DNA from: Octopus sinensis
Lineage: Eukaryota
DNA length: 64,000 nucleotides
NCBI RefSeq assembly: GCF_006345805.1
Contig: NC_043007.1
Span: 26,660,001-26,724,000 of the forward strand
Direction: 5' to 3'
The position numbers were made by a program, and so were the translations under genes. Shown here piece after piece: positions 4,403 through 62,773 of the stretch. The notes below the pieces were generated by a model. It was given only the letters and a program-made list of their open reading frames with translations. It did no database searches and was not told the origin of the DNA. How positions within the stretch are numbered: position 1 is the first letter of the stretch; each line of letters opens with the position of its first letter.

Positions 4403-5558
4403 CTTACATTTCTTAATGCGCAATTGTCTAACACCGTGGTGGTGATAGTGTTGGTGATAGTGCTGGTGGTGAGTGCGATAGCGGTGATAGTGGTCATGTT
4501 GGCGGTGGTGTTGCAATGTGAGGTTGTGATGGTGGTGGTGGTGGTAGCGGTAGTGGGGTGATAGTGGTGGTGGTGTCGGTGGTGGTGGTGGTGGTAGTGG
4601 TGGTAGTGGGGTGGATAGTGGTGGTGGTGTCGGTGGTGCTGCTTCTGGTGGTGGTTGTGGTAGTGGTGAGATGGTGGTGGTAGTGGTGAGGTGATGGTGC
4701 TTGTAGTGGTGGTGGTATCGGTAGTGGTGCGTCTTGTCGTGGTGGTGGTGGTGTTAGTGGTGGTGCTTCTGGTAGTGGTGGTGGCAGTGGTGGAGTGGTA
4801 GTGTGGTGGTGTGGCAGTGGTGCTTGTCATTGTGGTGGTAATGGTGGTGGTGATAGTGGTGGTGGTGGTGGTTGCCATGGTGATGGTTGTCATGGGGGTG
4901 TGGTGGTGGAGGTGGTGTCGGTGATGTTAGCGGTGGTTGTGGTGGAGCAGTATCGATGGCGTCTGTATGGTCGTGGTGGGATAGTCACGGTGGGGATGGT
5001 GGGGTGGAGGGAGGCTGATCATTGTCGTGGCAGATGTGGTGGTAGTGATGGCAAGATGTGTGACAGTGGTGGTGAAAGAGTGGATGCCGATGGTTGTAAT
5101 ACTGTTGCTGCTGGTATCGCTGCTGCTTCTTGTGGTGGTGGTGGTGGTGGTTTTGGTGGTGGTAGTGGTGGTGGTGGTCGGCATGGTGGTGGTGCCGATG
5201 GTGGTGGTGGTGACGGTGATAGCGCTATTGATGGTGCTGTCATCCCTGAATAAACGACAGACTGGGCGTTTTCCTTCAGCTACATTTAGGTCGCAATTTC
5301 AAAAATATTCCATAAGTTCTTTCTTTTGGCACGATGCCACTAATTTCGAGGATGAGTTACAGTCGATTATATCAGGCTCCGCTTTTGCAAGACATTTCAT
5401 TTCACCAAAACCTCAAGGGAAATATATACCCATCCTCAGTCTCAGCAGAATTCGAAATCAGAAGTTAAAGGATCACATCAAAATATTTCTAGGGAATTTC
5501 GCCGCTATTTTACCGATCCGTAAATAACTGGGAAGACGGGCTTAGACGAGTACATTGA

Positions 5559-5611
<53 letters not shown>

Positions 5612-5977
5612 ATGGTGGTGGTGGTGGTAGTGGTGGTGGTGGTGGTGGTGGTGGTGGTGGTGGTGGTGGTGGTGAGCTGGCAGAATCGTTCACACACCGA
5701 GCGAACTGCTTAGCGGTTCTTCGTCTGCCGCTACGTTCTGAGTTCAAATTCCACCGAGGTCAACTTTGCCTTTCATCCTTTCGAGATCGATGAAATAAGT
5801 ATCAGTTAAATACTGGGGTTGATGTAATCGACTCATCTCCTCCCAAAAATTGCTGCCCATGTGGCAATTATCATTATTATTATTATTTTATTATTATTAT
5901 TATTATTATATTATATTATTATTATTATATTATTATTATTATTATTATATTATTATTATATTATTATTAATATTATT

Positions 5978-10175: not shown

Positions 10176-10491
10176 GTACTTAATTTATCGACCTCGAAAG
10201 TCAACCTCGGCGGAATTTGGACTCAGAACGTAAAGACAGAGGAAATACCGCTTAGCATTTCGCTCGGCGTGCTAACGTTTCTTATTCCTTTACTGCCCAC
10301 AAGGGGCTACATACAGAGGGGATAAACAAGGACAGACAAACGTTTCTGCCAGCTCGCAGCCTTCGATTCTGTGCAATATTTACACAAGACTAGAATTTTG
10401 ATCTGAGGCTGTAAAGAACCGTAAATAATACCAACTGGCTGTTTGACCGACTTTCTGACTATGCACAACCAAGAGATTTAAAAAATTAATA

Positions 10492-12246: not shown

Positions 12247-12438
12247 CAGTAATTCCACGACTATCGTGGGTGTTACCCTCCAAAACACCTCGCGATAGGT
12301 GAAAATTCGCGAAGTAAAAACATTACTGTACTGTCTATTTATTTTATTATAAATGCAAAACACCACCACAGAGGAATCGACGTAAGTTTAAATAATAAAC
12401 CGCGATAGTTGAACCGTGATAGGTGAACCTCGATACTG
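12247..12438. mobile_element. Tigger-like MITE
   Basis: TA|CAGT...ACTG|TA ends with imperfect TIRs containing CGCGATAG repeats. Confidence 0.6.
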
Positions 12439-15140: not shown

Positions 15141-16014
15141 GTTCCGAGGAGGGGGAGGAAGTACTTCATGGAAAGTTCCAAGGAGGGTGAGGATCGGGAA
15201 TAATTACTTCCTGGAAATTTCCGAGATGAGGACAAATAACATCCTGGTTATTTCCAAGGAGGGGAAGAATTACTTCCTGGAAAGTTCCACGGAGGGGTGG
15301 AATTATTTCCTGGAAAGTTCCGATGAGGGGGAAATGCCTACGTGAAAGTTCCAAGGAGGGGGAGGAAATAAAGAATTACTTCCTGGAAAATTTCCAGATG
15401 GGGAGGAAAGTGAGGAATTACTTCTTGGGAAGTTCTGAGGAGAGGTAATACCAACTGAAAAGTTCCAAAGATTGTGAGTATGGGGATGAATTACTTCCTG
15501 GAAAGTTCCCAGGAAGTGAGGAATTACTTCCTGGAAAATTCCAAGGAGGGGGAAATGTGGAATTTCTTTCTGGAAAGTTCCGAAGAGGGAAGGAATTACT
15601 TCGTTGAAAGTTCCAAGAAGGGGGAGTAATTACTTAGTGGAAATTTCTGAGGATGGAGAATTACTTTCTGGAAAGTTCGAAGGGGAGGTATTCCTTCCTG
15701 TAAAGTCCCGATCTGGGGGTGAATGACTTCCTGAAAAGTTGCGAGAAGGGGGAGAAATTACTTCATGGAATGTTCCGAGGCGGAAGGTAGTACTTCCTGC
15801 AAAGTTCCAAGGAGGGGTGGGAAGAGGATGAATTACTTCTTACAGAGTTCCGAGGAGGGGGTATTACTACCTGGATAATTCCTAGGAGCAGGAGGAATTA
15901 ATTCCGAAACGTTCCGAGGAGGGCTTTCTTCCTGGAACGTTTCGAAGATGGAGAACTTTGTGGGAGATGCTGATGAGGGGACAGAGAGGAAGGACTTCCT
16001 GGAAAGTTCCGAAG
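15141..16014 (+). repeat. Minisatellite, ~30-45-bp variable unit (GGAATTACTTCCTGGAAAGTTCCGAGGAGGGG)
   Basis: About 20 diverged units visible. Confidence 0.9.
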
Positions 16015-22940: not shown

Positions 22941-23846
22941 ACGAGAGTTCCGGAACCCAGAAATGAACTCATTTGCATATAGCCAATCAGAGCTCACATT
23001 GACCTTGACAAGTTAAAAATCACACTCTACCATGTAAACTCAAGACTAAGAATGGTGTTGTAAGTTGACCGATCACCAAATTATGCCTGATTTTAGGGGA
23101 CAAGTAATTAGATTTGTATCAATATCTATTATCGGATTTTGTTTCGATTTGTTCGCTGTTTTCATTTCTCACATGCGACTATCTATAACTGACACTGTTA
23201 TAAAAACAATGATGTGATACTGGCTTCAAATTTTTATACAAGGCCAGCAATTTCGTGGGCTGGGGTGGAGGGGCGGTTAGTCGATTACATCGACCCCAAT
23301 ACCCGAATGGTACTTATTTTATTGACACCGATACGATGAAAGGTAACGTCGACCTCAGCGGAATTTGAACCGCTAAGCATTTTGTTCAGCGTGCTAACTG
23401 TTCTACAAACTCGCTACCTCAACTTGATGAAATATTAGTTTCAAATATTGGCACAAGGCCAGTAATTTCAGAGTAAGGCGCTGTACTGCAAGTACAGGCT
23501 CTCCAGGAAGTTTGCTAACAATAGAGTTTGTCTGTTTATCATTATCTGCTGTTTATATCGCAGACTTTCCAAAATATGTGAGAGATGTGGATGAGAAAAA
23601 TGTGGGTAGAGGGTGATGTGCTAGCAACCCTCTCTCTCCTTACTATTCTACAAAGTAAATAACAACACAAATGATGACGTAGAGGCAGAGAAGAACAAAA
23701 ACAACAAGCACTATTAAAAGAGAAAAGAAACATGGTCATTCCTTACCCATGTGATCATATCTTATCGCACATCACGTGTTATGCGCCCATAAATTTGTTT
23801 GATAGTTGAGCTCTGATTGGCTGTATGCAAATGATTTCATAACTGG

Positions 23847-24421: not shown

Positions 24422-24952
24422 CCCTTCCTCGGAACTTTCCAGGAAGTAGTTACTCCCCTTCCTCTCCCTCCTCGAAACTTTCCAGAAAGTAATTCCTTTT
24501 ATCCCCACCTCCACGGAACTTTCCAGGAAGTAATTACTCCTGTCCTTGGAACTTTCCATTAAGTAATTCCACCAAGGATCTTTCCAGGAAGTACTTTCTC
24601 CCCTTCCTCTCCCTCCTCGTAACTTTCCAGGAGATAATTCCTTCTCCTCGGAACTTTCTAGGAAATAATTCCTCACCCTAGCTCTCCCTCCTCGAAACTT
24701 TCCAGAAAGTAATTCCTTTTATCCACACACACGGAACTTTCCAGGAAGTAATTACTCCTCTCCTTGGAACTTTCCATTAAGTAATTCCCCCAAGGATCTT
24801 TCCAGGAAGTACTTCCTCCCCTTCCTCTCTCTCCTCGTAACTTTCCAGGAGATAATTCCTTCTCCTCGGAACTTTCTAGGAAATAATTCCTCACCCTAGC
24901 TCTTCCTCCCTCGGAACTTTCCATGACATCATTCCTCCACCTCCTCGGAACT
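24422..24952 (-). repeat. Same minisatellite family in opposite orientation, with a ~220-bp higher-order duplication
   Basis: GGAACTTTCCAGGAAGTAATT units; the block starting at 24463 recurs at 24683. Confidence 0.9.
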
Positions 24953-26361
24953 AAATTGCTCCTTATCTAACTTGGTTCCATTGGAATGTCTGTGAGCTAC
25001 CTACTTCAAAAAATCAATTCTTCGACATGATAATTAACTCATAGCTAGGACCCTGACAGGTTTTTCTATTCCGGATCAGCAGAGATCTGAGAATAATAGT
25101 TGTACAACAGATAACTAAAGCATTACATTTTTAAGTGGAATAATGTTTTCTTTCGAATATGTCTCGCCATATTTAAAAGCCAGTTCTTCCTTTGTTGTTA
25201 AATCTACGAACACAGAAATTGACTAAGAAGATGATTGTCATCGCAAAACGTTACATTCCCTATCAAAATGACTCCAGCACCTTTTAAACAGGAGATATTG
25301 ATGTATAAGGAAATTTAAAATGTTTAAAATCCTATAATTTTGTTTAAACATTCCGATTTGTTCGCTGTTTTCATTTCTCACATGCGACTATCTATAACTG
25401 ACAATGTTATAAAAACAATGATGTGATACTGGCTTCAAATTTTTATACAAGGCCAGCAATTTCGTGGGCTGGGGTGGAGGGGCGGTTAGTCGATTACATC
25501 GACCCCAATACCCGAATGGTACTTATTTTATTGACTCCGATAAGATGAAAGGTAACGTCGACCTCAGCGGAATTTGAACCGCTAAGCATTTTGTTCAGCG
25601 TCCTAACTGTTCTACAAACTCGCTACCTCAACTTGATGAAATATTAGTTTCAAATATTGGCACAAGGCCAGTAATTTCAGAGTAAGGAGTAAGTTGATTA
25701 CATGGACTCTAGTAATCAACTGGTACTTATTTTACCCAACCCGACAGGATGAAAGCTAAAGTCGATGCTGGTGGGATTTGAACTCAGAGCGTAAAAATGA
25801 ACAAAATGCCGTCAAACATTTTGCCGGAGTGCTAACTATTCTGCCAGTTTGCCGCTTTAAATTGATGAAATATTAGAATTTATAAGGAAAGAAGTATACT
25901 CTTTCTTCTCACAAAAGTACCTGGTACAGCTTTGATTAGCAAATGCAGCATATTCGGAGCTTAACAGAGGACCTCTCCAAAGACGACAAGTTGGCAGAAC
26001 CGTTAACGGCATTTCACCCGTCTTTACTTTCTTAGTTCAAATTCCGCCGAGGTGGAGTTCGCCTTTTATCATTTTGTCATCGATGAAATAGGTACCAGTT
26101 GAGCACTGAGATTGATGCATTCGACTAACCCTTTCCACGGAAATTGCTGGCCTTGTGCCAAAACTTGAATTCGATATATATTATGTTTCGTTTTTAGTTT
26201 CTACGCACAAACACGTTCTACTTATATATGTTATAACACAACCCACTGATAATAAATGTCTTATTAGTATTTTCCACTAATACCAATAATATATCAGTAA
26301 CTGACTTGAATAATCTCTCCCTGGGAATGTTATGACTGTAATTTCTATTAAATAAAATAGT

Positions 26362-26860
26362 TTCTGTTGTGTCTGGGGAGAGTCATTTTCTTTTTGTGCC
26401 TTATAATATATATTTCTTTACTACCCACAAGGGGCTAAACACAGAGAGGACAAACATGGGCAGACAAACGGATTAAGTCGATTATATCGACCCCAGTGCG
26501 TAACTGGTACTTAATTTATCGACCCCGAAAGGATGAAAGGCAAAGTCGACCTCGGTGGAATTTGAACTCAGAACGTAATGGCAGACGAAATACCGCTAAG
26601 CATTTCATCCGGCGTGCTAACGTTTCTGCCAGCTCAACGCCTTATAATATAACACACACACCGGTAAAGTTTCCACTTTTTTTCTTGTTTTTATTTTCCT
26701 AAAATTTTCGTTGCGTCTTGCAACCTTTTCAATAGTTTTGACGCAAGACGCAACGAAACTTTCAGGAAAATAAAATTAAGAAAAAAGGGGAAATTTTACC
26801 GGTGAGTGTGTTATATTATAAGGCACAAAAAGAAAATGACTCTCCCCAGACACAACAGAA
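26362..26860. mobile_element. Fold-back element (Penelope-like), interrupted by a SINE-B
   Basis: Outer arms TTCTGTTGTGTCTGGGGAGAGTCATTTTC... are mirrored at 26860. Hammerhead-like motif at 26699-26735 (minus). Related copy at 9200-9440. Confidence 0.7.
26411..26638 (-). mobile_element. SINE-B, full length
   Basis: Family match; TSD GCCTTATAATATA (26398-26410, 26639-26651). Confidence 0.92.
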
Positions 26861-38690: not shown

Positions 38691-39469
38691 GCCCTAGCGT
38701 TTATGAGCTCGCGAGTTTTGACTTAGGGGCGATATGCTTACTATTTCTAGCAAACTGAACGATCGCACATATACTGGCTCCCTTGTTACTTCGTTGGAAA
38801 CTCCGTTATATAACGCCTCAGTTTACGGAACGTTATAAACAAGTTGATAACATGGGACGTTGTTTACTAAATTAATTCCCATTTTAAGTGTTCTCATATT
38901 GCTACTTAGCATTTCGTTTCATCGCCTCCTTCAAGGTTCTTGGTGGTGGCGTTGGTGGAAGTGATGGTGGTGGTGGTGGTGGCGGTAGTGATGTGATGGT
39001 AGTTGGTTGGTGGCGGGGACAGCGCCGATGGTGGTGATGGCAGCTGCGGCGCCGATAAAGATGGATGCGTTTGTTGTTTGTTGTGATGGTGGTGGTACTG
39101 GTGTTGGTGGTGCTTCCTTACGGTGGTGGTGGTGGTGGTGGTGGTCACGACGGCAGTGACGGTGCATGGCGACGGCAGCGGTGGTGGCTGTGGAGCTTGT
39201 TGTTGTTGTTGTGGTGGTGTTGATTACTGAGATGGTCATATTCTTGCTGTTGTTGTAGTGTTGGTGGTTGTAGAGGCGGTGGTTGTGTTTATGGTGGCAG
39301 TGATGATTGTGACGGTGGCGTATTATCGGTGCTAGAGCTGCTGCTGCTGCTGCAGACGGCAGAAGAGGCGGTGATGAAGGAGGTGGCCTTGTAGGTAGTA
39401 ATGGCATTGGTGGCGAGATGTCATTGATAGATGGGTGGAATGATGATAAAAGCGGCGGCGATATTAGCA

Positions 39470-40400
39470 ATAAGGCGCTGGGCAAAATGCTTAGCGGTAT
39501 TTCGTCTGCCGTTACGTTCTGAGGTCAAATTCCGCCGAGGTCGACTTTGCCTTTCATCCTTTCGAGGTCGATTAAAGAAGTACCAGTTACGCACTGGGGT
39601 CGATATAATCGACTTAATCCGTTTGTCTGTCCTTGTTTGTCCTCTCTGTGTGTAACCCCTTGTGGATAGTAAAGATATAGGTATTTCGTCTGCCGCTACG
39701 TTTTGAGTTCAAATTCCGCTGAGGTCGACTTTGCCTTTTATCCCTTCGGCGTCGATAAAGAAAGCACCAGTGAAACACTGGGGTCGACGTAATCGACTTG
39801 CAACTTCCTCCAAAATTTCAGGCCTTGTGCCTATAGTAGAAAGGATTATGATCTGAGTTCAAACTCCGCCGAGATCGACATTGCTTTACATCCTTTCGGC
39901 GTCGATAAAATAAGTACCAGTGAAATACTGGAGTCGATGTAATCGATTTATACCCTCCCGAAAAATTTCAGGTCTTGTACCTTTAGTGGGACAGCTGGCA
40001 GAATTATTTACACGCCGAGCAAAATATTTACCGGTATTTCATCTGTCTTTACATTCTGAGTTCAAATTCCACGAAGGTTGACTTTGCCTTTCACTCTTTC
40101 GGGGTCGAAAAAAATAAATACTGGTCAAGTACTGGGGTCGATGTAATCGCCTAGGACCCTTTGCCTTTAGTAGAAAGGGTTATTATCCCGATGAGAGCTG
40201 GCAGAATCGTTAACGCGCCATGCAAAATGTTTAGAGGCATTTCGTCCGCATTTACACTCTGCGTTCAAATTCCGCCGGGGCTGGACTTTACCCATTCGTG
40301 GTCGATAAAATAAGTATTAGTTGAGCATTGGCAATCGATGTAATCGATTTTGCCCTATCTTGAACTTACTGGCCTTGTACAAATTCTTGAAACCAATAGT
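39470..40400 (+). mobile_element. Head-to-tail cluster of about 5 SINE-B-related units
   Basis: Repeated GAGTTCAAATTCCGCCGAGGTCGACTTTGCC...GGGGTCGATGTAATCGA modules with two tail types. Confidence 0.88.
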
Positions 40401-40977
40401 GATGGAGGTGTGCAACCCTAGATCAACCTTGATCGTGCATACTTGCAAACAAAGACATATCCACCGTGACCATCTCGCATTTTGTTATTTCTATTCTTTT
40501 TTTTTTGTCACGCACAGGGAATCAAACAGTATGAAAATGTTTCCTTATTTCTTTATTGCCCACAAGGGGCTAAACATAGAGGGGACAAACAACGACAGAC
40601 AAAGGGGTCAAGTCGATTACATCGACCCCAGTGCGTAACTGGTTCTTAATTTATTGACCCCGAAAGGATGAAAGGTAAAGTCGACCTCGGCGGAATTTGA
40701 ACTCAGAACGTAACGGCAGACGAAATACCAATTTCTTTATTGCCCACCGGGGGCCAAACATAGATATGGACAGTACAACTGATGGGATCAGTGAATCGAT
40801 ATGATTTTACATAAATGTGACATCAAAAATAAAATACAATACATAAAAATCGAATGGAATACACTGTACAAAAACAATACAAATGAAGCGATGATCAAGT
40901 TACGCTCCGATCCCACAAGCCCCGATCTACCGCTGATACCTTTTTATTTTTCCTTATTTTTTTTTTTCCTCGTCTAT

Positions 40978-43900
40978 TCACACGGTTCCTTGCACGCACA
41001 ACACTCGTGCAACATACTTCCATCTCTTTTGGAACGTACACTCTGACAGACACCTCTTCTCCAGCCACAGTTTCCTTTTCAAATGAAAAGAAAAAAAGGA
41101 TCGTAAATTGTCACCAGAGATAAAGTTGCCTGTCTTAATTCCTTTTATCCTAGTATTCCATACAGCCTCTTTTGCTATTGCTACAACCGTGAGAAAACAA
41201 TTCTTACCTTCGTTCGTTAGAACTCCCGGTGGGTCAATTTTTATAATTGACTCAGTCGACAGCCGTACTCTTCCTTCGCCGGACAACAGATGTTCAGCAT
41301 AAGCCCACAGTTATCTGTTATCTCCGGACACTGAACAATAGCGTGAGGGACGGTTTCCCTGTCCCCACCGCATCTTGGACAGGTCGGCGACTGACGTTTA
41401 CCATGTCTTGCGAGCTTATCCCAAACGGGCAAGGCACCTCTGTAGCATTGCCAGGTAAGGACTTTTGGAAGTTGTCCAACGTTCTCAACCCGAATGTACG
41501 ATGAAACAAGCTGTCCAGTTGAATAAATCCGAGACCTAGAGTCGACCCCAGGCCATCGTCGCATTCAGACTCTACCAACCCACTATATAAAATCCGTGTG
41601 GAACCCCCACCGCTGGCGTTGCCCGAGCGCCAGAACAGCAAGAGGGCCTTACGGCACTCTTTATGCCACTCACTCGACCTCGGTCTACGAGAACACCAGG
41701 CTTCCTGTTCGCAAAAACTCTTGAACTCAGGGAACATTTGTCTGGCCAGCGGAGACCACACCCGTTCACTATCCAGGAGAATCCAGAGGTGCCTCAACCT
41801 CAACGCATGTCTGCGCATCATTAACCACGGCATCCCTAAACCTCCATTTAAAGGCTTTTGACAGCAGACAGAGCATTTCACAAGTGGCGACCTGCCCTTC
41901 CACAAAAAGCGAAAGAGCTGTCTCTCCAACCTGATCAACCACGAATCCGGACAGGGCACGACAGTCAGGCGGTAGGTAATGACCGATGCGATAAACACAT
42001 TGGCCACTTCCGCCCTCCCTTTCAGGGATAGCCACCGCCAAGACCAAGTCTTGACTACTGCAGCCACCCTGCTCAATACCTCCGTCCAGTTCTTCTCTAT
42101 CTGGAGGCCTGGTCCAAACCAGACTCCCAGCAACTTAACCGGTCCCTCCGTCCAGCGCCTAACAACACTGTCTGAAGGCATCGACTTGCCAACCCAGGTG
42201 CCGAGCTGCAAGCCGACCGACTTTTCCCGGTTAATCTTTGCTCCTGCTACCTCCTCGTAAGCCTCAATAGTCTTACCTACTTCACGTAGGCGTACCACTG
42301 TGGTTACACTGATAGTGATATCATCCGCGAAAGCCGTAACAAACTCCTCTAGTCCTGGTTCTCTCGGGATGCCACTCAACCTTTGCAGTAATGGCTCGAG
42401 AGCCATCACATACAAAAGTGGTGAAAGCGGACATCCTTGACGAACCGAGCGTCTGATGCAGAACGGCTTCGAAAGGAAACCGTTCACCCGAACTATCGAG
42501 TCAATGTTGTGGTACAAAGCGATAAACCACCTGAGGAAGCCAAGGCCCAGGCCAAACCGCGCAAGTACAGTCGCTAGGTATCGATGGTCAACCCTATCAA
42601 AAGCTTTAGACTGGTCCAAATGCACCAATGCCCCACCTTTGCCAGATTTATTACCAAACCTCTCTATGGTATAGCGAATAAGATGGAGGGTATCCTGAAT
42701 GGTTCTGCCTGGGATGGCACATGTCTGTGCCTCCCCGACTATACCATTCGCGACACGCGCCAACCTTTTTGCTAGAACCTTGGCCAAAATCTTCACTTCT
42801 GCGTTTAACAGAGTGATGGGCCTGAAATTCTCTAGAACGTCCCCCTTGTCCGGGTCCTTTCTGACCAACGTCACTACTCCCCGGCGCACAGATCTGGGGA
42901 TAAACCCATTCTGTTTCCAGTTCGCGTACACGTCAGTCAGTAGTTGCCCGAACAAGTCTGGCATACATTTATACAGCTCGTACGGAAGACCATCAAGTCC
43001 CGGTGACTTACCCGCTTTACAATCGGCCAAAGCCTCCATCACCTCCTCAAGTGTGATTGGCCCTTTGCAAGACTCCGCATCCGACCCCGAGAGGCACGGC
43101 AGCCCGGTAAGAAAGTCCTCGAGGGCTCTCCCACCACCAGGACCGCCGTCACCCCCGAACAGCTGGGCGAAGTACTCCCGAAAGACCTCACACATTTTCT
43201 CGGGTTCGTTTATCAAGACATCATTTTGATTCGTCAAAGACCGAATAGAGGAACTATTTCCTTGCCGAGCTTCCACCACTCGGGCCCATCCAGCGGCTTT
43301 GATTCCTTCACTTCCCATTGCACGTAACTTAGCTCTGGTAATACTTCCCATGTGGTGGGCTTCAAGATGCTGGTTTAACTCCAGTCTTTTCACCCTCGCT
43401 TGGTCTGTATTACCAGTCCTCCAGGCTTCTTCTAGTTCCTTAACTAGACCATCTCCTATTTTACGTCCCTTCTTAGCTAAACTTATGCTAAACCTAATAG
43501 ACTCATATTTGATGGCTCTTTTTAGGGCGTACCACCATTTGTTATTAATGATGGTACCTGTTAATGCCCTCTGTATTAACATCTTGATCCGCTTTCTGTA
43601 CTCCTCAATCGCCAAAAGGGACGTATTGAGTTTCCAGTAGCCAGATCCCTGTCTATGCAACTTATCTACCGTCAGTTTACAGGTAACCATCTTGTGGTCA
43701 CTGTAGCTGACTAGAAAAAACTGTGGACACTCAACTATGGACTTATCTTTTTCTCTAATTAAAATCCTATCTAGATATGTTCTGGTAGACCCGTCACTAT
43801 TTGACCACGTCCACTGTGGAGTGTTCGGGTGCTCCAACCTATATGGATTTGCTAGCTGAAATTGACTTAGCAGATCCCGAAAGCCTGTGTTACATTTTCT

Positions 43901-44380
43901 GTTCATGTTCGAGTTTGAGCCAACACAATCTGTGTGTGCTGCACATATTGTATTAGAGTCTCCTAACACTACTAGTGAATGCGACGTGGCTAGGAACTTT
44001 CCTAGGCCACGAAAATATTCAGTTTGCGGGCCAATAATGTTTGGTGCATAAATAGCGACCAGCCTGATTGTCTTGCCACAACTGAATGTCAAGTCGAGAA
44101 CGACCAGCCTGCCTTCTGGGTCAGAAAAAACCAACTTTTTCTCGGCTACCCGGTTTCTTTTTAGTAGGACCAACACCCCACCCCCACCTCCCGCCCGACT
44201 CGGAGAAACGTATTTCTCGTAGCCGTTCAGGAGGGGGAGCAGATCTCTTGGCCCCTTCACCCGGGTTTCCGTTGCAACAATTACATCCAAATTTCTCGAC
44301 CTGATGTCATTCAGAAAGCGTCCTTGCTTCCAGCTTGACAACAGGCCATGAACATTTAAACAACCAATGTGAATAGCCAT
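40978..44380 (-). pseudogene. LINE ORF2 (APE endonuclease, reverse transcriptase, C-terminal zinc-binding region) with two frameshifts near the C-terminus
   Basis: EN motifs CLNVHGL, ATETR, YAPN, GDSN, DRIL, SDH. RT motifs KSPGLDGLPYELY, RPITLLN, DQSKAFDRVDH, RQGCPLSPLLY, FADD. The frame continues as TWQCYRGALPV...CPRCGGDRETVPHAIVQC after a shift near 41460, then LWAYAEHLLSGEGRVRLSTES after a shift near 41310. Confidence 0.95.
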
Positions 44381-44403
44381 CACTTACCTGTTTAATTACC
44401 TGT

Positions 44404-45900
44404 TTAATTTTTTTTATCCAGGGTCGGAGGTGGACGGTCTTGGGAAATAGATTTGTCAAAATCCCGTCTCACCACCGACACAGAATTATCAGGTGGAGGG
44501 GGAATCTCCACCTTTTCCTTTTCTCGCGGGATCGGAGCTGGTAATCCATGAAATATCGACTTGTTAAAATCTAATCTCAATGAAGATACAGTCTTTCTGT
44601 ACTTATTTTGTAGAATTCTATAAGTCTTATTTGAGACTTCATATATGTCGTAATTGATAAATTCCTCTGAAAGGTTATCAATTTTTTTTACAGTCTTTAT
44701 GAGTTGAATGTCTGTCATGAGCTCAGTATCTTTAGTGTATACGGCTATTATGCCTTTTTCTTCTTTTTCTCTTCTGGCAGTCTTTTTTGGTCGTTGTTCT
44801 GTAGTAGTCGCCGCTCTCGGCTGGGTTGCTGGTTGTATTTTTCTTTTGTTTGTTGTTTTTTTCTCATCTGTTTCTTCTTTATCTTCTTCCTCTTTGTCTT
44901 TTTTCTCCTCTTCCTCCTCTTCTTCATTTTCCTTGCAGTTCCTTCGAATGTGGCCTAATTGACCACATAAAAAACATCGAGGTTTTCGGCCCTCAACAAA
45001 CACCACGAGGTTCTCCTACCCTACCTCAATTGTCTCAGGAATTGTTTGAATTATTTTAGGGTCCGCTTGAATGAGAAGATTAATTGTTTTACCATCCCAG
45101 CGTGGGTTTTCCGTAGCGGTAGCCTGGAGGAGTGTAATGTTTTCTACCTCTTTGATTAGGACTGCCGCCAACAACCACATAGGTTCGACCTCTGGCGGGA
45201 CCCTTGTAATTTTTATTCGCGACGTCCTCATCCCCATATAATAGGGTATTAACTCCACGTCGTTCGTTTTCAACGTTTCCACTGAGTTCTTGTGTGCTAT
45301 TTCTTTATTGGTGAACCTTACTTCCACCGTTCCGAATTTTTTTCCTCTTCTCAGAAATACTACGTCGCCCAATATTGGCTTTAAGCACTTTTCTATTTTC
45401 TCTTCTGACATTCTTTCAATTTTTCTATTTTGTAGACAATATGTTTTGAAAATTATTGTTTTTTGCTTTTCTTCCTGTAATAACTTTTGCGGAGGTTCAA
45501 TTTTCACACTGTTGTCATTTATTTCCATCATTTTGCTGTATTTCATAATTTCGCTTTTATTCGTCGACAGTATCTGGGTTCCACCCCCAGCAGCCAACGC
45601 AAAACTTTTTTTTCCATTTTTTGGTTCTATCTGGATGCTAGGCACATCAATTATTCTCTTCGACACAATGCCTTTGTTCTCTGGCAAAGTCAGAAACTCT
45701 TCTGGTGAAAGTTCTGACGAGCTCTCAGACACATCTCCAAAAATATCAAATATATTATCATCTCTGCTATTCCTTCTTGTAGCGGGGGAAACCCCTATTT
45801 CCTTGTCTGTAGTTGGCTCCTCGCCGGACATGTATTTCCTCCTCTCAACAGGAGAAACAAGTATTTCTGCTCCAACGGTAGGCTCCATGCTAGACGACAT
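44404..45900 (-). pseudogene. LINE ORF1 (~500 aa) with CX2CX4HX4C zinc knuckle, broken by one in-frame TAG
   Basis: Track ORFs 45016-45927 and 44404-45006 are in the same frame: ...IEVG*ENLVVFVEGRKPRCFLCGQLGHIRRNC. First ATG (MSSSMEP) is at 45900. Confidence 0.88.
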
Positions 45901-47297
45901 TCTTCCCCCCAAAGGGGGAATGAACAACGCGTGCTACCACAAGCACTAAGTGTTTTCAATTGAAAACTCCAACAGTTAAGTTATTCAACAGTTTAACAAG
46001 AAACAACAGTTGTTAACAATATTAACACCACGAAACAGCAATTCTTACTTCACGAACACATGTGCGGCAGACGAAATACCGCTAAGCATTTCGCCCGGCG
46101 TGCTAACGTTTCTGCCAGCTCGCCGCCTTATCAAACAGTAGGAAAATGTTTCCTTGTCTTTGATGATTGCGTTCCAAACGCAATTTTACTGCTATGTCTA
46201 GCAAAATAAGTAGGTAACTTTGTTATTGCTGCCGCTTCTGTTAAAGGCCCAGGTCAATTCTAATCGAGTGCACCTACGTACTATCAAATGACCTCTCTGT
46301 GCTTTGCTTAGTGCAAAGTGTCCTCTTTGTAAGAGAATACTGTCTGCTTTATGGGAAAATTGGTCGCCGTTTCCAGCATGTCAAGCGACGATGTTGAGTA
46401 TCTGTCATTCATAGTGGTGTTGGTTGTAGTGGTGGTGGTGTTGTTGTTATTGTTATTGTTTTTGGAAACCTTGGTGTTTGAGAGTTTTGTGATTTCTATA
46501 GTTGTTGTTGTTGTTGTGGGTGGTGGTGGTGGAGTTAGTGATGGTCGTCGTCGTCGTTGTCTTCGTAGTGGTGGAGGGGTGGAAGTAGTAGTGGTGGTGG
46601 TGATGGTGGCGGTGATTTGGTGCTGGCGATAACGATTAGACAGTGGTGGTAGTGGTGGTAGTAACGGTGGTGACGTCCGTGGCGAAGTAGGTGGCGGCGG
46701 CGGCGGTGGTGGTGGTATTGTAGTAATTGGTTGTTTTAGTGTTGGTGATAATGAATTAGTGATTTAGTAGGTGGTGTTAGTGGTGGTGGTGGGGATTATT
46801 GAGGACGTTGGTGGAAGGGGTGAGGTTAGTGGAGGGATGGTGTTGTAGTTTGGCGATAGTAGAAACGGTATAGGTATTAGTAGTGGTTATGGTAGTAGTT
46901 CGAGTTGATGGCGATGGTGGTGATGGTGGTGATGTCATTGTTTATAGAAGTAGAAAGGCGGTGGTGGTGGTGTTGGTGTGGTGGTGGGAAAAATTTTTTT
47001 TTTTTTTTTCATGCAATTATATAAAGGAACGAGGGATGAATGTGATGGTGGCGATGATGATGATGATGATGATGATTATGATGGGAGCGGTGTTGGCAGG
47101 CGTAACGATGGCGGGACTGGGTGTAATGGAAGTGTTCAAGTGTTTGTAGTGGTAGTAGTGGTGGTGCCCTTCCTGTGTTTTCTTTCCGTGTTCATTGTTC
47201 TCATGCTTCAGATGTAGTAGAGAAACCCAGCCGCTACCCGAGGAATGCAGGTTCGATTCATGTGGCTGTCTGTTGTCAGCTTTTTTTCCCCCGTCTT

Positions 47298-49884: not shown

Positions 49885-49891
49885 GTCGTCG

Positions 49892-49956
<65 letters not shown>

Positions 49957-50183
49957 CGTGGTGGTGGTGGTGGTGGTGGTGGTGGTGGTGGTGGTGGCGG
50001 TGGTGGTGGTGGTGGTAGTGGTGGTGGTGGACGTAACGTTGATAGTGATGTAAAGGTGATGTTTTCGTAGTTGATTGCGATGGTGGTAGAGGTGATGCTG
50101 CTACAGGTAATAGTGGTGGTGGTGGTGGTGGCAGTGGTGGTTGCAGTGGTAGTTACAGTGGTGGTAGTGGTGGTGGTAGCAGT

Positions 50184-50239
<56 letters not shown>

Positions 50240-50950
50240 CGGCCGAGGTGATGGTTGTGGTGGAAGTGACCGTAAAGGTGTTATTGGTTGAGAAAGCAGA
50301 GTTGACGGTGATAGAGTGTGACTGCGATAATACGATGATGGCGATCACGATGATTGTAGGGTTGTCGGCGTTGATTGGATAATGGAGGGGACGATGGTAG
50401 TGAGGATGCAGATGGTGGTTGGTATCGATGGTAGTGATGGAGGTTCTTTGATGGTGACAATGGTGGTAGCGGTGTGGTGGTAGTAGTGGTGCTAGAGGTG
50501 TTGGTAGTGGTAGAAGTGGTGGTGGTGATTCGATAATAGTACTGATGTTAGTATTGATGATAGTGATGATGGAGATTCTCAGGTGGTCATCGTGATAATT
50601 GTTGCATATGCGATAGCGGTGGGGATAGAGAGAGAGTTATTCGTACTGGTGGTGGTGGTGGTGGTGGTTATGATGATGATAATGATAGTAATGGTGGTGT
50701 TGATTGTTGTGGTGGCAGTGGTTTTGGTAAGGCGGGGTTGGGCCGGCAGCGGCGGCGGCGGCGATGGTGGTGGTGGTGGTGGTGGTGGTGGTGGTGATAG
50801 TGGTGATAGTGGTGGTTATGATGATGATAATGATAGTAATGGTGGTGTTGATTGTTGTGATGGCAGTGGTTTTGGTAAGGCGGGGTTGGGCCGGCAGCGG
50901 CGGCGGCAGTGGTGGTGGTTGTGGTGGTGGTGGTGGTGGTGGAGGGTTGA
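49885..50950. repeat. (GTT)n/(GGT)n low-complexity tract (similar tracts at 4430-5240, 38940-39400, 46400-47100)
   Basis: Direct inspection. Confidence 0.93.
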
Positions 50951-51523: not shown

Positions 51524-52368
51524 ATATGAATATGTATATATATGTGTGTGTATATGTATATATGTATATCTGTCTGTGTGTATATATATATATGTGTGTG
51601 TGTGTATGTATATTCTTTTATTTGTTTCAGTTATTTGACTGCGGCCATGCTGGAGCATCACTTTAGTCGAGCAAATTGACCTCAGGATTTATTCTTTCTA
51701 AACCTAGTACTCAATCCATCGGTCTCTTTTGCCCAACCGCTGACTTACGGGGACATTACGGGGACAGCATCGGTTGTCAAGCGATGCTGGAGTGACAAAC
51801 ACAGACACACAAACATATACATATACATATATATGCATGTATATATACATATATATGTAGGTATGTACATATATGTATGTATATATGCATATATTTATAT
51901 ATTATTTATATTATTGTACATATATATGTATGTGTGTGTGTTTGTGTGTCTGTGTTTATCCCCCTAACATCGCTTGACAACCAATGCTGGTGTGTTTACG
52001 TCCCTCTAAAGAGACCGATAGAATAAGTACTAGGCTTACAAAGAATAAGTCCTGGGGGTCGATTTGCTCGACTAAAAGCGGTGCTCTAGCGTGGCCACTG
52101 TCACATGACTGAAACAAGTAAAAGAGTAAAAGAGGATATGTATATATGTATATTTACAAATGTAGATACACGCGCACGCACATACACTCGCACACATGCA
52201 CATGTATTTAAATACGTACATACATACATACACACAGAAACATATCAGAATCGGAATGGATTTGGTACTTGGTGTTACTTTCAATGCTCGTGATGACTAT
52301 ATTGGGAAATACAGAAAGGTATTTAGATGCTGTAAGACTTCCAAACGGCTAGAAACACAGGGACATAC

Positions 52369-52609
52369 ATATTTCTTTACTACCCACTAGGGGCTATACA
52401 CAGAGAGGACAAACAACGACGGACAAACGGATTAGGTCGATTATATCGACACCAGTGCGTAACTCGTACTTAATTTATCGACCCCGAACGGATGAAAGGC
52501 AAAGTCGACCTCGGTGGAATTTGAACTCAGAACGTAGCAGCAGACGAAATACTGCTAAGTATTTCGCCCGGCGTGCTAACGTTTCTGCCAGTTCGCCGCC
52601 TTGTTGCAT
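52369..52609 (-). mobile_element. SINE-B, full length
   Basis: Family match; TSD AGGGACATAC (52359-52368, 52610-52619). Confidence 0.9.
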
Positions 52610-52765
52610 AGGGACATACCATACACTTGCGTACCCATTTCCCCCACCCTCTCTATCACTAACGATATATCAGAGCTTGTGTGCTCGCGTATACGGGAGC
52701 ACATGTATGCACGTTCGCGTTCGTGCCAATTTGGATGCGTATTTTGTGACTTCATATATGTATAT

Positions 52766-58778: not shown

Positions 58779-59314
58779 TGTGTGTGTGTGTGTTTGCTCC
58801 GATATAAGAACCGTTGTTATTTACGTTTTGCTGATGTGCATCTTGTCTCTAGTGGTTCGACAAAGAGAAATCAATAAAGTAAGTACCGGACATAAACAGG
58901 TAGAGCGTTCGATATGACAGACTGTAATCTACGACGCCCATGTCCCCCCTCCATATCACCAGTCCAATAACTGAAACCACTAAAACGGTAAGTCACGTGT
59001 CACTTGTTTTAAATGGCCTTTGTATGAAGTGTCTGTATTATTGACTGTCATTTACTCTTGAAGATATTAAAACCATTGTTCTTTGTTTTTCGATAGTTGA
59101 AAATCAACGACACAATAACTATTAGGTTTCGTTTCCTTATCTTCTTTATTCAGTATAGCTAACCGTCTGGTAAAATCAATAATTTTTCGGTTGCGTAATT
59201 TTTCTTTCAGATCAGAGTAAAGTTTTTCGCAGATCGTTTTGCTTTATTTTTGTTCTTTTTTTTTTTTTTATTCATATCCGTCGAGGCCTCGGATTCATAA
59301 GGACGGTTACCCGG

Positions 59315-59724
59315 CGAGCTGGCAGAATCGTTAGCACGTCGGGCGAAATGCTGAATGGTATTTCGTCTGCCACTACGTTCTGAGTTCAAATTCCGCCGAG
59401 GGCGACTTTGCCTTTCATCCTTTCGGGGTCGATTAAATAAGTACCAGGTACGCACTGGGGTCGATATAATCGACTTAATCTGTTTGTCTGTCATTGTTTG
59501 TCCCCTCTGTGTTTAGCCCCTTGTGGGTAATAAAGAAATAGGTATTTCGTCTGCCACTACGTTCTGAGTTCAAATTCCGCCGAGGTCGACTTTGCCTTTC
59601 ATCCTTTCGGGGTCGATTAAATAAGTACCAGGTACGCACTGGGGTCGATATAATCGACTTAATCTGTTTGTCTGTCATTGTTTGTCCCCTCTATGTTTAG
59701 CCCCTTGTGGGTAGTAAAGAAATA
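59315..59724 (+). mobile_element. SINE-B dimer inserted as one unit
   Basis: Head plus two tail-bearing units joined at AAAGAAATA|GGTATTTCGTCTGCC (59541). TSD GGTTACCCGG (59305-59314, 59725-59734). Confidence 0.92.
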
Positions 59725-60037
59725 GGTTACCCGGTTTACATAGCATATAAGTAACTGAGATCATAGCATTTCTTTTGAACATAAGGTCGGTCCGTTAGAG
59801 GATTCAAAGCCTGCGATTTGAAGGCGAGATGAGGTAGGGTGGGAGGTAGGTTGATCAGATCAACCCCAGTACTTGTTGGGTGCTTTATTTTATTGAACAA
59901 GAAGGGATGAATACAAAGTTGACCTCAGCGGGATTGGAACTCAGGACGTATAGAGCCGGGAGAAATACCTCTATTCATTTTCTCCAAAGTGTTAACGGTT
60001 CTGCCAGCTCACCGACTAGTATGTTACTTGTCGCAAT

Positions 60038-60799: not shown

Positions 60800-61260
60800 G
60801 CAGAATATTAATTTTTTCTTTTTCCAGACCTGTGAAACAGAAACTGGTTTTCACCCAAATCATCCAGTATTTTTTTTTTATAAGAATGTTTAACAGAATT
60901 TGTCTTGAAGTTACAATTTATATCTTGGTCCAATAATTAGATAAGTGGCCTGGCATTGGATCGTAATACCGTAACTTTAACGTATGATTGTTCTAAATTA
61001 CATGGATGCGATGGAAAGTTATCAATTACTAATAAAATACTGTAGTCGATGTTATTTTCTTTAATAATAAATGTCAGCTTCAGGAAAGAATTTCTGATAA
61101 AACTAGTGTTCGAATATTGTAGCAGTCTTCCATGATTGATTTTAATTTGCACCACCAGTAAGCTATAGCGCTTTTTATTCAATCTATTCATTCCACATGG
61201 ATTGTGAGCCCTATTAATTAATAATGGCTTCATGAAACAGCTACCAAATGAATTGTAGCA
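60800..61260 (-). mobile_element. Tigger/pogo-type DDE transposase remnant
   Basis: CYNSFG...KPLLI...NP...LLVIDNFPSHP...VTVLRSNARPLI*LLDQD matches the pogo DDE_1 pattern (LLILDNAPGHP...NTTSLIQPLDQ). Confidence 0.7.
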
Positions 61261-61280
61261 TAATAATAATAATAATATAA

Positions 61281-61932
61281 TAATAATTAATTCTTTTATT
61301 GACCACAAGGGCTGACAAAAATTAGTTTAAAAGATAAAGGGACAAAACAGGATGAAAGGTTACAAAGGGTTTTGTCCGTTTGTAAAAAAACCGTGTAAAA
61401 ACAGTGTAACAACGAAAAACTCCCAATAGGGGGAGGCGTAACGAAAGGTTCCTGGTGGAAAAGCCCATAAAAGCTACGGGAGCCTGGTCAAAAGGGGTGG
61501 GGGAGTAGAGAGCTCCTTTCTCCTTTTGTAATACGTTTTTTTTACAGGTGTATCCTCAGAATGGCTCCTTTCAAACTGGCCATTCTTGCGACATTTATCC
61601 ACCTTTCACTAAACTTGCTATCGGACAGCACTTCCCTCTCTACTCTCATCTTCCTTTTCAAGTGAGACTTGAAAAAGTTGATGAGGCCTGGGCCAAAGAG
61701 GAAAGTGACTGACCGTAGCCCTTTCAAACGGGTCCACCATACAACCTCTTTCGCCACAGCCACTAGGCACAGGAAAACTGCGTTGCCCTCCCGGTTAAAG
61801 GAGGTCGGCAGGGCAATTTTCACTATGGATTCAACGGACAAAACCCTTTGTAACCTTTCGTCCTGTTTTGTCCCTTTATCTTTTAAACTAATTTTTGTCA
61901 GCCCTTGTGGCCAATAAAAGAATTAATTATTA
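61281..61932 (-). mobile_element. 3' fragment of a second Tx1-type LINE family, with an inverted second copy of its 3' end
   Basis: ORF 61542-61841 aligns with the ORF2 C-terminus at 40978-41286 (SVESIVKI/STESIIKI, AVAKEVVW/AIAKEAVW, HLKRKM/HLKRKL, SERW/QKRW). 61281-61380 and 61833-61932 are inverted repeats with 2 mismatches. Confidence 0.9.
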
Positions 61933-61941
61933 TTATTATTA

Positions 61942-62080
<139 letters not shown>

Positions 62081-62094
62081 CATTATTATTATTA

Positions 62095-62140
<46 letters not shown>

Positions 62141-62773
62141 GCCAGATCTGTCCTATACGCGACAGTAGCTGTTCGACATAAACCCATAGTTCAGCAATAC
62201 TCGGACACTGGACGAGTGCATGCAGAACGGTTTCGTCGTCCTAGCAGCACCTCGGGCAGGTCCGGCTGACGGCACTTCCGTGCCGGTAGAGTTTATCTCG
62301 AATAATAGCGTGATTTGTTCTTTAGAGGCTTTGAAGCTGTTATTATTATTTTTTTTTTTTGCTGTTATTGACGTAAAATATCCCTTTAATGTTTTCTTCT
62401 AGAATGGAACGATTCCATCAACATTAAATATGTTTTGTTTTTTTAAAGGAAAGGGATTCTTCTTCAATTATATTTACTAATTGTAATAGAAATTATTCGA
62501 CAATAAGTTCATGACATAATTTCTTATTCCTATGCAATTTCAATTTCTTGTGGGTGGGGAGTGTGTGTGTGGGTGTGGGGGGAGAGTGCGTTGGCGCCCA
62601 TGTCTGTGCGCGCGCATACGCGGGTGTGTTTGTACGTGTCTGTGTTTGCATGTATGTATGCATGTATGTACGTAGGTACGCATGTATGTATGTATGTTTG
62701 TTTGTTTGTTTGTTTGTATGTATATATGTATGTATGTTTGCATTTGTAATTTTGTCTTAACGTACTTAAAGTA

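What the first reader, a model, noticed from the sequence alone, without database searches (positions are those of the whole stretch)
40521..46155. Candidate self-targeting retroposon system: a Tx1-type LINE inserted at a defined 16-bp site in its likely partner SINE
Seen: a full-length LINE lies inside SINE-B with a perfect TSD GGTATTTCGTCTGCCG (element sense), located between the SINE's A-box-like and B-box-like motifs. The identical junction AAAGA(A/T)AT(A/T)|GGTATTTCGTCTGCC joins SINE-B units at 39680 and 59541, so there are three events at one site in 64 kb. Known: Tx1-clade LINEs include sequence-specific families targeting tRNA-gene arrays, U2 snRNA, 5S rRNA, microsatellites and other transposons. 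Inference: this LINE's endonuclease prefers a site in the head of the SINE it mobilises, so SINE spread creates new landing pads and SINE-into-SINE insertion rebuilds an intact Pol III promoter. Specificity is not absolute, since solo SINE-B copies (26411, 52369, 59315, 40547) have unrelated TSDs.
Basis: partly seen in the sequence, partly recalled or inferred. Interest (0 to 1): 0.88.

Follow-up and report, generated by a model that had tools for sequence, protein, structure and literature searches.

The report
LINE insertion hot-spot inside partner SINE
A dead but complete L1/Tx1-type jumping gene sits in a short repeat (SINE) that shares its tail, at the same nucleotide where two SINE-to-SINE joints lie, so its cutting enzyme probably favours that motif, though one window cannot prove it.

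Summary
A 5,335-bp LINE (minus strand, 40730-46064) splits a SINE-B copy and is flanked by a perfect 16-bp duplication, GGTATTTCGTCTGCCG. The split SINE has its own 26-bp duplication. SINE-B tails abut the same 16-mer at 39679|39680 and 59540|59541.

- The LINE is complete in structure but dead: one in-frame stop in ORF1 and two frameshifts in ORF2.
- It belongs to the L1 group. Tx1-clade membership is plausible but could not be tested.
- The two units of the 59xxx dimer are 98.4% identical, so this may be a local or same-source event.
- The solo copies do not all have unrelated targets. Copy c52370 landed in non-SINE DNA at GGTATGTCCCTATG, and c59312 at GGTTACCCGG.

Best reading: the LINE endonuclease has a relaxed preference for nicking before GGTAT(T/G)TC. 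The commonest copy of that motif in this genome lies in the SINE head. SINE-into-SINE events resolve in register and give partial dimers.

The closest precedent is crocodilian Tx1-Mar and SINEU, which target a Mariner element with a 16-bp duplication and form tandem copies. No other copy of this LINE could be reached in any collection, so a genome-wide census is still the decisive test.

The parts
40730..46064 (-). L1/Tx1-group LINE, 5,335 bp. It is complete in structure (5'UTR, ORF1, ORF2, 3'UTR and tail) but inactivated.
   Evidence: It is the only copy in the window (blastn and tblastn).
46065..46080 (-). 5' copy of the LINE target-site duplication GGTATTTCGTCTGCCG (SINE positions 81-96).
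   Evidence: 16/16 identical to 40714-40729.
40714..40729 (-). 3' copy of the LINE target-site duplication.
46081..46129 (-). Head of the host SINE-B, with the A-box-like TTAGCACGCCGGG at 46094-46106.
   Evidence: Neither ARAGORN nor Rfam calls it a tRNA.
40547..40713 (-). Rest of the host SINE-B (positions 97-264): B-box-like GAGTTCAAATTCC at 40692-40704, core, and LINE-like tail.
46130..46155 (-). 5' copy of the host SINE's own 26-bp target-site duplication.
   Evidence: 25/26 identical to 40521-40546.
40521..40546 (-). 3' copy of the host SINE's own target-site duplication.
44404..45900 (-). ORF1, with a CCHC zinc knuckle at 44929-44979. It is interrupted by an in-frame TAG at 45016-45018.
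   Evidence: No Pfam domain was found in the N-terminal 303 aa.
40978..44383 (-). ORF2: APE endonuclease at 43694-44317, reverse transcriptase at 42119-42844, zf-RVT at 41322-41465. Two frameshifts lie near 41456-41483 and 41286-41312.
   Evidence: (relatives L001 and L003 read through in one frame).
40730..40777 (-). LINE 3' tail shared with SINE-B, including a 4-bp hairpin (40742-40754) followed by AATAAAGAAAT.
   Evidence: In one search, 93% of cells are paired and one pair shows a GC<->CG compensatory change between the Octopus-type and Argonauta-type tails.
39452..39845 (+). Composite: a diverged SINE head (39452-39495), the 16-mer (39496-39511), a SINE-B body and tail (39512-39679), the 16-mer again (39680-39695), and the remainder of a different SINE family (39696-39845).
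   Evidence: The head has 2-3 indels in about 50 nt. The body has none in 168 nt.
59305..59734 (+). SINE-B partial dimer: head (59312-59356), unit 1 (59357-59540), unit 2 (59541-59724). An outer duplication GGTTACCCGG lies at 59305-59314 and 59725-59734.
   Evidence: period 184, 98% match; 181/184 identical, with 3 private shared variants.
52356..52620 (-). Solo SINE-B (52370-52602) inserted in non-SINE DNA. Its duplication GGTATGTCCCTATG / TGTATGTCCCTGTG (52607-52620 and 52356-52369) resembles the hot-spot.
   Evidence: About 0.07% of window positions match GGTATTTC at 7 of 8 or better.
10274..10347 (-). Counter-example: a 5'-truncated SINE-B tail (10283-10338) inserted in another SINE head at a different site, with duplication AGAAACGTT.
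26398..26651 (-). Solo SINE-B with an unoccupied perfect 15-mer (26580-26594) and its own duplication TATATTATAAGGC.

Best explanation
The window comes from an octopod-like cephalopod genome. A stringent-type L1/Tx1-group LINE and a tRNA-related SINE (SINE-B) share a roughly 35-48-nt 3' tail with a small hairpin.

Proposed mechanism:
1. The LINE's APE endonuclease nicks the bottom strand so that the new copy's tail is joined directly 5' of GGTAT(T/G)TC on the top strand.
2. The second nick falls about 16 nt downstream.
3. The preference is relaxed, not absolute.
4. A perfect, very abundant copy of the motif lies in the head of the SINE family itself (positions 81-96). Many insertions of the LINE, and of the SINE RNAs it mobilises, therefore land there.

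Outcome by template:
- LINE cDNA has no homology with the 16-nt top-strand overhang. The result is a complete insertion with a 16-bp duplication.
- SINE cDNA can anneal to that overhang in register. The product is then head + [81-264] + [81-264], a partial dimer with no separate duplication.

Shown: the anatomy, the coincidence of the junctions, the look-alike non-SINE target, and the shared tail.
Inferred: that the endonuclease (rather than RNA annealing) sets the site, that this LINE family mobilises SINE-B, and the in-register resolution of the 5' junction.
For: - A perfect 16-bp duplication flanks the LINE inside a SINE that has its own 26-bp duplication.
- Tail|GGTATTTCGTCTGCC junctions occur at 39679|39680 and 59540|59541, in the same orientation as the target.
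- The probability by chance is about 2e-11, or about 2e-5 within SINE sequence.
- Solo SINE-B c52370 sits in non-SINE DNA at GGTATGTCCCTATG. It occupies one of the only two non-SINE GGTAT[GT]TC sites in the window. A match of 7/8 or better to the motif has P of about 0.006-0.01 after multiple trials.
- The outer duplication of c59312 starts with GGT.
- Three of the 4 perfect sites are occupied, against 0 of the 4 imperfect sites.
- The tail is shared by LINE and SINE-B. In Argonauta hians the same tail type is shared by the LINE relative (60% aa identity) and local SINEs, with hairpin covariation.
- The Argonauta LINE has a 17-bp duplication, so a stagger of about 16-17 nt is a family trait.
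- ORF2 has APE + RT + zf-RVT domains, and its best solved-structure match is human L1 ORF2p at E = 2e-62.
- Literature precedent: Tx1-Mar LINEs and SINEU share a preferred site in a Mariner element, with a 16-bp duplication and tandem copies arising from sequential insertion (PMC4494074).
Against: - There is only one LINE copy and nine tails in 64 kb.
- No further copies could be retrieved from any collection.
- The two units of the 59xxx dimer are 98.4% identical, against 88-94% for other SINE-B pairs. They are bounded by a 3-nt GGT microhomology, so a local tandem duplication is possible.
- Four or five of the nine tails lie at sites with no resemblance to the motif (host SINE, c26411, c10274, c37227).
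- The Argonauta LINE copy is in a unique AT-rich site, not in a SINE.
- The site is also the 3' arm of a 13-bp RNA hairpin in the SINE head. RNA-level processes could therefore favour the same position.
- Nothing here tests the endonuclease directly.
Confidence: 0.6

Rival explanations
1. RNA-guided homing rather than endonuclease specificity. Copies already sitting at the site give read-through transcripts whose 3' ends carry GGTATTTCG. These ends anneal to the nicked bottom strand of other copies of the site, so the site propagates itself. This resembles the 3' read-through and annealing described for some site-specific LINEs.
For: - In Argonauta, 9 of 12 tails are followed by the same C+TAT. 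This looks like a templated or annealed 3' extension.
- In a sister family, tails run into (ATT)n.
- The junction base after GAAAT varies (A or T).
Against: - c52370 landed at a look-alike site in unique DNA that differs from the SINE site after 8 nt.
- The 5' copies of the duplications show that GGTAT belongs to the target and not only to the RNA.
- Annealing alone does not explain where the first nick is made.
Confidence: 0.15
2. The SINE-SINE junctions are not insertions at a DNA hot-spot. They come from local tandem duplication by microhomology, or from SINE RNAs cleaved in the hairpin loop at 80|81 followed by end-to-end template jumping of the reverse transcriptase. On this view the LINE hit at the same nucleotide is a coincidence.
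For: - The 59xxx units are 98.4% identical and share private variants, with GGT microhomology at both ends.
- One duplication (GGTTACCCGG) flanks the whole dimer.
- Position 80|81 is the boundary between loop and arm of a 13-bp RNA hairpin.
- A SINE-A partial dimer with its junction near position 99 lies next door.
Against: - The LINE duplication proves a staggered DNA cut whose first nick is at exactly 80|81.
- A coincidence with two junctions has a chance of about 1/230 each.
- The junction falls exactly at the SINE's 3' terminus, which is the signature of target-primed reverse transcription.
- At 39680 the two units belong to different SINE families. The head upstream is more decayed than the SINE-B body, as expected for a nested insertion.
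- No solo copy starting at position 81 is present in the window.
Confidence: 0.15
3. This is chance plus ascertainment. SINEs cover much of this genome, nested repeats are common, and the reader picked out a striking coincidence after the fact.
For: The sample is very small. The window is dense in SINEs, with about 30 blast segments.
Against: - Nucleotide-exact and orientation-exact coincidence of three junctions has P of about 2e-5 even if all insertions are forced into SINE sequence.
- There is in addition a look-alike non-SINE target.
Confidence: 0.05

Closest known systems
Tx1-Mar LINEs and SINEU SINEs of crocodilians (Kojima 2015, PMC4494074)
   Same: - A Tx1-type LINE and the SINEs it is thought to mobilise share a preferred insertion site inside another abundant repeat.
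- The duplication is 16 bp (AGGTTCCCATCAGCAT).
- Tandem SINE copies 'sandwiching' the duplication are explained by sequential insertion.
- The preference is graded, from 13% to 90% of copies.
   Different: - There the target is an unrelated Mariner DNA transposon. Here it is the head of the SINE family that shares the LINE's tail.
- There, hundreds of copies were counted. Here there is one LINE and nine tails.
- SINEU has snRNA-derived heads. SINE-B has a tRNA-like/CORE-type head.
Classical target-specific Tx1-clade families: Tx1L in Tx1D (Xenopus), Keno (U2 snRNA), Mutsu (5S rRNA), Dewa (tRNA-Leu spacer), Kibi and Koshi (microsatellites)
   Same: - L1-group architecture (APE + RT + zinc finger, and an ORF1 with a CCHC knuckle).
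- Sequence-dependent choice of a repeated target (PMC4494074, PMC3706591).
   Different: - Those families are largely confined to their target. Here about half of the events lie elsewhere.
- Clade membership of this LINE was not tested by phylogeny.
Human L1 and Alu: Alu-into-Alu insertion at A-rich stretches
   Same: A relaxed endonuclease motif that happens to be carried by the partner SINE makes the SINE population a frequent landing site. This comparison rests on my own knowledge and was not checked here. ORF2 is homologous to L1 ORF2p.
   Different: - L1 recognises the poly(A) tail (relaxed type) and the motif TTTT/AA.
- Here the tail is a specific sequence with a hairpin (stringent type).
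- Here the preferred site is a specific 8-16-mer in the SINE head.
Stringent LINE/SINE pairs with a common 3' tail (for example eel UnaL2/UnaSINE1; reviews PMC3747384, PMC4176376)
   Same: A shared 3' tail of about 35-48 nt, ending in a small stem-loop plus a short A-rich terminus. The tail is conserved between Octopus-type and Argonauta elements.
   Different: No mobilisation assay exists here. Those pairs are not known for a site preference inside the SINE.
Octopus CORE-SINEs OR1/OR2 (Ohshima and Okada 1994, cited in PMC4824008 and PMC4758252)
   Same: A tRNA-related head followed by a conserved core, in octopus. SINE-A and SINE-B here share the head and core but carry different tails.
   Different: Identity with OR1 or OR2 could not be tested, because their sequences are not in the tools. 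The resemblance of the core is from memory only.

Membership tests
L1 group of non-LTR retrotransposons | ORF2 with an N-terminal APE-type endonuclease followed by a reverse transcriptase homologous to L1 ORF2p. | tested here: met
   - Pfam Exo_endo_phos at 1.9e-10 and RVT_1 at 3.1e-29.
- The best solved-structure match is human L1 ORF2p at E = 2.4e-62 over residues 6-868. R2 scores only 5e-20.
L1 group of non-LTR retrotransposons | C-terminal cysteine-rich (zf-RVT) domain. | tested here: met
   zf-RVT at 4.4e-08 in the frameshifted piece 41241-41564. The domain is contiguous in relatives L001 and L003.
Tx1 clade | RT-domain phylogeny places the element with Tx1 reference elements rather than with L1 proper. 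| not testable with these tools
   No Tx1 reference sequences could be reached. Weak hints only:
- The best named homologue is 'Transposon TX1 uncharacterized 149 kDa protein' of Stylophora, at 312 bits and 30% identity, against 214 bits for human L1.
- O. vulgaris is reported to hold 13 recently active L1-Tx1 families (PMC13282606).
Tx1 clade | ORF1 of the RRM/zf-CCHC kind (a Type I variant; PMC5203782). | tested here: inconclusive
   A zf-CCHC is found at 2.8e-05. No RRM or any other domain is detected in the first 303 aa.
Target-specific LINE family (Kojima's working criterion: one sequence type in more than 20% of flanks) | A recurrent target sequence at the 3' junction of independent copies. 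| tested here: inconclusive
   - There is a single LINE copy.
- Counting LINE plus SINE-B tails, 3 of 9 lie at the SINE 16-mer and 1 of 9 at a look-alike.
- One of the three may not be independent.
Strictly site-specific LINEs (R1, R2 or Keno-like) | Nearly all copies lie in one target. | tested here: not met
   - Host SINE, c26411, c10274 and c37227 have unrelated targets.
- The Argonauta relative sits in a unique AT-rich site with duplication TATTTTTAAAATTTGTA.
LINE/SINE partnership (stringent type) | The SINE 3' tail is homologous to the LINE 3' tail. | tested here: met
   - 34 nt at 85-91% identity, or about 48 nt with gaps.
- The same relation holds in Argonauta.
- The hairpin is kept, with one compensatory pair.
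LINE/SINE partnership (stringent type) | The LINE proteins mobilise the SINE RNA. | not testable with these tools
   This needs a retrotransposition assay.
tRNA-derived (SINE2) / CORE-SINE | Head recognisable as a tRNA, with A and B boxes. | tested here: inconclusive
   - ARAGORN finds no tRNA.
- Rfam finds nothing at E <= 5.
- Only the motif-level TTAGCACGCCGGG and GAGTTCAAATTCC are present. The head folds into a long hairpin.

The most novel reading that the evidence does not exclude
A LINE/SINE pair in which the preferred nick site of the LINE endonuclease is carried in the head of its own partner SINE. Each SINE amplification would then multiply harmless landing pads for both elements, and in-register SINE-into-SINE insertion would regenerate a complete SINE. 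This would be a self-propagating 'safe harbour', a strategy not described for Tx1-type elements, whose known targets are unrelated repeats or RNA genes.
Probability: 0.3. Interest if true: 0.7.

Novelty: new variant of a known kind. Interest (0 to 1): 0.5.

Why it matters
If a genome-wide census confirms it, this would extend the known range of Tx1-type target choice to the element's own non-autonomous partner. Known targets so far are RNA genes, microsatellites and DNA transposons.

It would also give a simple explanation for SINE dimers and clusters in SINE-rich octopod genomes. It would supply a defined 8-16-bp substrate for studying how an APE-type LINE endonuclease reads sequence. Finally, it matters for repeat annotation: partial dimers produced by nested insertion should not be called separate SINE subfamilies, a point already made for SINEU-3B in PMC4494074.

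Tried and rejected
1. Collecting other genomic copies failed.
   - Protein searches with ORF2 found nothing closer than 59-63% identity.
   - The 102-aa C-terminal piece found nothing.
   - Exact DNA scans for the SINE site or the junction gave zero hits in viral, metagenome and prokaryote-genome contigs.
   - Literature string searches for the SINE sequence gave zero hits.
2. A tRNA origin of the head was not detectable with ARAGORN or Rfam.
3. A Tx1 phylogeny could not be built. No reference sequences were available, and the supplement of PMC5203782 is not held.
4. A possible extra decayed SINE-B tail at 39388-39407 lies in GGT-rich simple sequence, and I dismissed it as chance.
5. Tandem arrays of relatives at 45% identity in ENA sample ERZ21867824 were examined for a sandwiched duplication. 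The junctions were not interpretable, so they are not used as evidence.
6. A cruciform in the target DNA was considered. The inverted repeat is good in RNA because of G-U pairs, but poor in DNA, where only 6 perfect bp remain, so I did not build on it.
7. A microhomology tandem duplication for the 59xxx dimer could not be excluded, and I kept it as a rival explanation.
Full report
**What is there.** The window is AT-rich eukaryotic DNA, dense in microsatellites and in SINEs that share a head and core. On the minus strand, 40730-46064 is a 5,335-bp non-LTR retrotransposon.

- ORF1 (45900-44404) carries a CCHC knuckle. It is broken by an in-frame TAG at 45016-45018.
- ORF2 (44383-40978) has an APE endonuclease, a reverse transcriptase and a zf-RVT domain.
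- Relatives read ORF2 in a single frame. This copy needs two frame changes, near 41456-41483 and 41286-41312.
- The element is therefore complete in structure but dead. It is the only copy in the window.

**The insertion.** The LINE is flanked by GGTATTTCGTCTGCCG, matching 16/16 (40714-40729 and 46065-46080). Outside these copies lie the two halves of one SINE-B. That SINE is bracketed by its own 26-bp duplication, matching 25/26 (40521-40546 and 46130-46155). One SINE was thus split by a staggered cut. The first nick lies between SINE positions 80 and 81, and the second between 96 and 97. The site lies between an A-box-like and a B-box-like motif, but neither ARAGORN nor Rfam recognises a tRNA. 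In the predicted SINE RNA, the 16-mer is the 3' arm of a 13-bp hairpin, and 80|81 is the boundary between loop and arm.

**The recurrent junction.** Nine LINE-type tails (...GTGGGYARTAAAGAAAT) occur in the window.

- Three are followed directly by GGTATTTCGTCTGCC: the LINE itself, 39679|39680 and 59540|59541. All three lie in the orientation of the target SINE.
- Under uniform insertion this has P of about 2e-11. If every insertion is forced into SINE sequence, P is about 2e-5.
- Of 8 distinct pre-insertion sites with two or fewer mismatches, 3 of the 4 perfect sites are occupied and none of the 4 imperfect ones.

**How firm each event is.**

- The LINE event is unambiguous.
- At 39452-39845 the two units belong to different SINE families. 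The second has a different tail. The head upstream has 2-3 indels in about 50 nt, whereas the SINE-B body has none in 168 nt. This is what a young SINE-B nested in an older SINE would give.
- At 59312-59724 the two 184-bp units are 98.4% identical, while other SINE-B pairs are 88-94% identical. They share three private variants and are bounded by a GGT microhomology. The whole dimer is flanked by GGTTACCCGG.
- That third event could be an insertion from the same or a sister locus, a retrotransposed dimer, or a local duplication. I count two firm events and one ambiguous one.

**New evidence for a sequence preference.** They are not all unrelated.

- c52370 sits in non-SINE DNA, with its duplication starting GGTATGTCCCTATG (the 5' copy at 52607-52620).
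- GGTAT[GT]TC occurs 12 times in the window. Only two of these lie outside SINE heads, and one of those two is this occupied site.
- A match of 7/8 or better to GGTATTTC is found at 0.07% of window positions. Allowing for five other events and an offset of one nucleotide either way, P is about 0.01.
- The outer duplication of c59312 also begins with GGT.
- The other targets show no resemblance: AAGGAAAC..., TATATTAT..., and AGAAACGTT, the last inside another SINE head.
- The preference is therefore real but relaxed.

**Partner SINE.** The LINE and SINE-B share the last 34 nt at 85-91% identity, or about 48 nt with gaps. The closest named relative of ORF2 (60% aa identity) is in Argonauta hians.

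- In 22 kb around that copy, the LINE and the local SINEs again share the same tail type.
- Across 21 tails, a 4-bp hairpin is paired in 93% of cells. One pair switches between GC and CG in the two lineages.
- This fits a stringent-type LINE/SINE partnership, though mobilisation itself is untested.
- The Argonauta LINE has a 17-bp duplication, TATTTTTAAAATTTGTA (L002 6869-6885 and 12651-12667), in unique AT-rich DNA. The stagger is thus a family trait, but the SINE target is not.

**Mechanism proposed.**

1. The endonuclease nicks the bottom strand at ...CGAAATACC|GC...
2. Reverse transcription starts at the tail.
3. The top strand is cut 16 nt downstream.
4. For a LINE template, the 5' end is joined without homology, giving a full copy with a 16-bp duplication.
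5. For a SINE template, the 16-nt top-strand end can anneal to its complement in the cDNA and prime second-strand synthesis. This gives the in-register partial dimer that is observed.

Steps 1 and 3 follow from the duplication. Steps 2, 4 and 5 are inferred from the standard model of target-primed reverse transcription.

**Comparison with what is known.** ORF2 is L1-group: its best solved-structure match is human L1 ORF2p at 2e-62. Tx1-clade membership is plausible but rests on indirect hints, because no phylogeny with reference elements was possible.

- One homologue is named after Tx1 and scores higher than L1.
- ORF1 has a CCHC knuckle (PMC5203782).
- L1-Tx1 families are reported as active in O. 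vulgaris (PMC13282606).

The closest precedent is Kojima 2015 (PMC4494074). Tx1-Mar LINEs and SINEU SINEs share preferred sites in Mariner-N4_AMi, have a 16-bp duplication, form tandem copies by sequential insertion, and show graded preference. What would be new here is that the target lies in the partner SINE itself.

**Verdict.** The finding is best described as an insertion hot-spot caused by a relaxed nick-site preference, not as a strict self-targeting system. No further copies of this LINE or SINE could be reached in any collection, so the decisive genome-wide census remains to be done.

Noticed in passing
window 61250-62300: Two inverted tails of a sister family (...GTCAGCCCTTGTGG(C/T)CAATAAAAGAAT, ending at 61290 on the minus strand and 61923 on the plus strand). 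Each runs into (ATT)n, with about 71 units at 61926-62140. A weak LINE C-terminal similarity lies at 62161-62271. The metagenome relative L003 has the same tail type, followed by (ATT)n.
   Followed up: partly
window 23279-23414 and 25488-25623: Two copies, 2,209 bp apart, of a SINE variant with a 24-nt internal deletion. The deletion begins right after the GG of the hot-spot (...GCTTAGCGG|TTCAAATTCC). It could be a scar at the nick site or a coincidence.
   Followed up: no
window 39704-39987: A partial dimer of the other SINE family (period 150, 81% match), whose second unit starts near SINE position 99. That is close to the second nick of the 16-mer. Together with 39452-40350 it forms a head-to-tail pile of five SINE units.
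   Followed up: partly
L004-L007 (ENA sample ERZ21867824): LINE relatives at about 45% aa identity sit in head-to-tail arrays of full-length copies that are 99.7-99.9% identical, with periods of 6,596 and 6,820 bp. A similar GGCCTTGTGCC...AAATAAAAT tail motif is present. The junctions could not be interpreted.
   Followed up: partly
L002 12017-12650 (Argonauta hians): The Argonauta LINE carries two copies of its 3'UTR and tail (ending at 12285 and 12650), separated by about 140 nt with a B-box-like GGTTCAATC. In addition, 9 of 12 tails in the locus are followed by C+TAT.
   Followed up: partly
window 46094-46129 plus 40692-40729 (SINE head; any SINE-B copy): The SINE head RNA is predicted to form a 13-bp hairpin, GGGCGAAAUGCU/GGUAUUUCGUCUG (z = -2.2). 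Its 3' arm is the hot-spot itself.
   Followed up: partly
window 15196-15817 and 24426-24943: Arrays of a 31-74-bp unit (GGAACTTTCCAGGAAGTAATTCC...) are present in opposite orientations about 9 kb apart.
   Followed up: no
window 4436-5674, 38930-39440, 46400-46600, 49891-50942: Long degenerate (GGT)n / (GTG)n tracts recur. One of them directly adjoins the SINE pile, and another adjoins the host SINE of the LINE.
   Followed up: no
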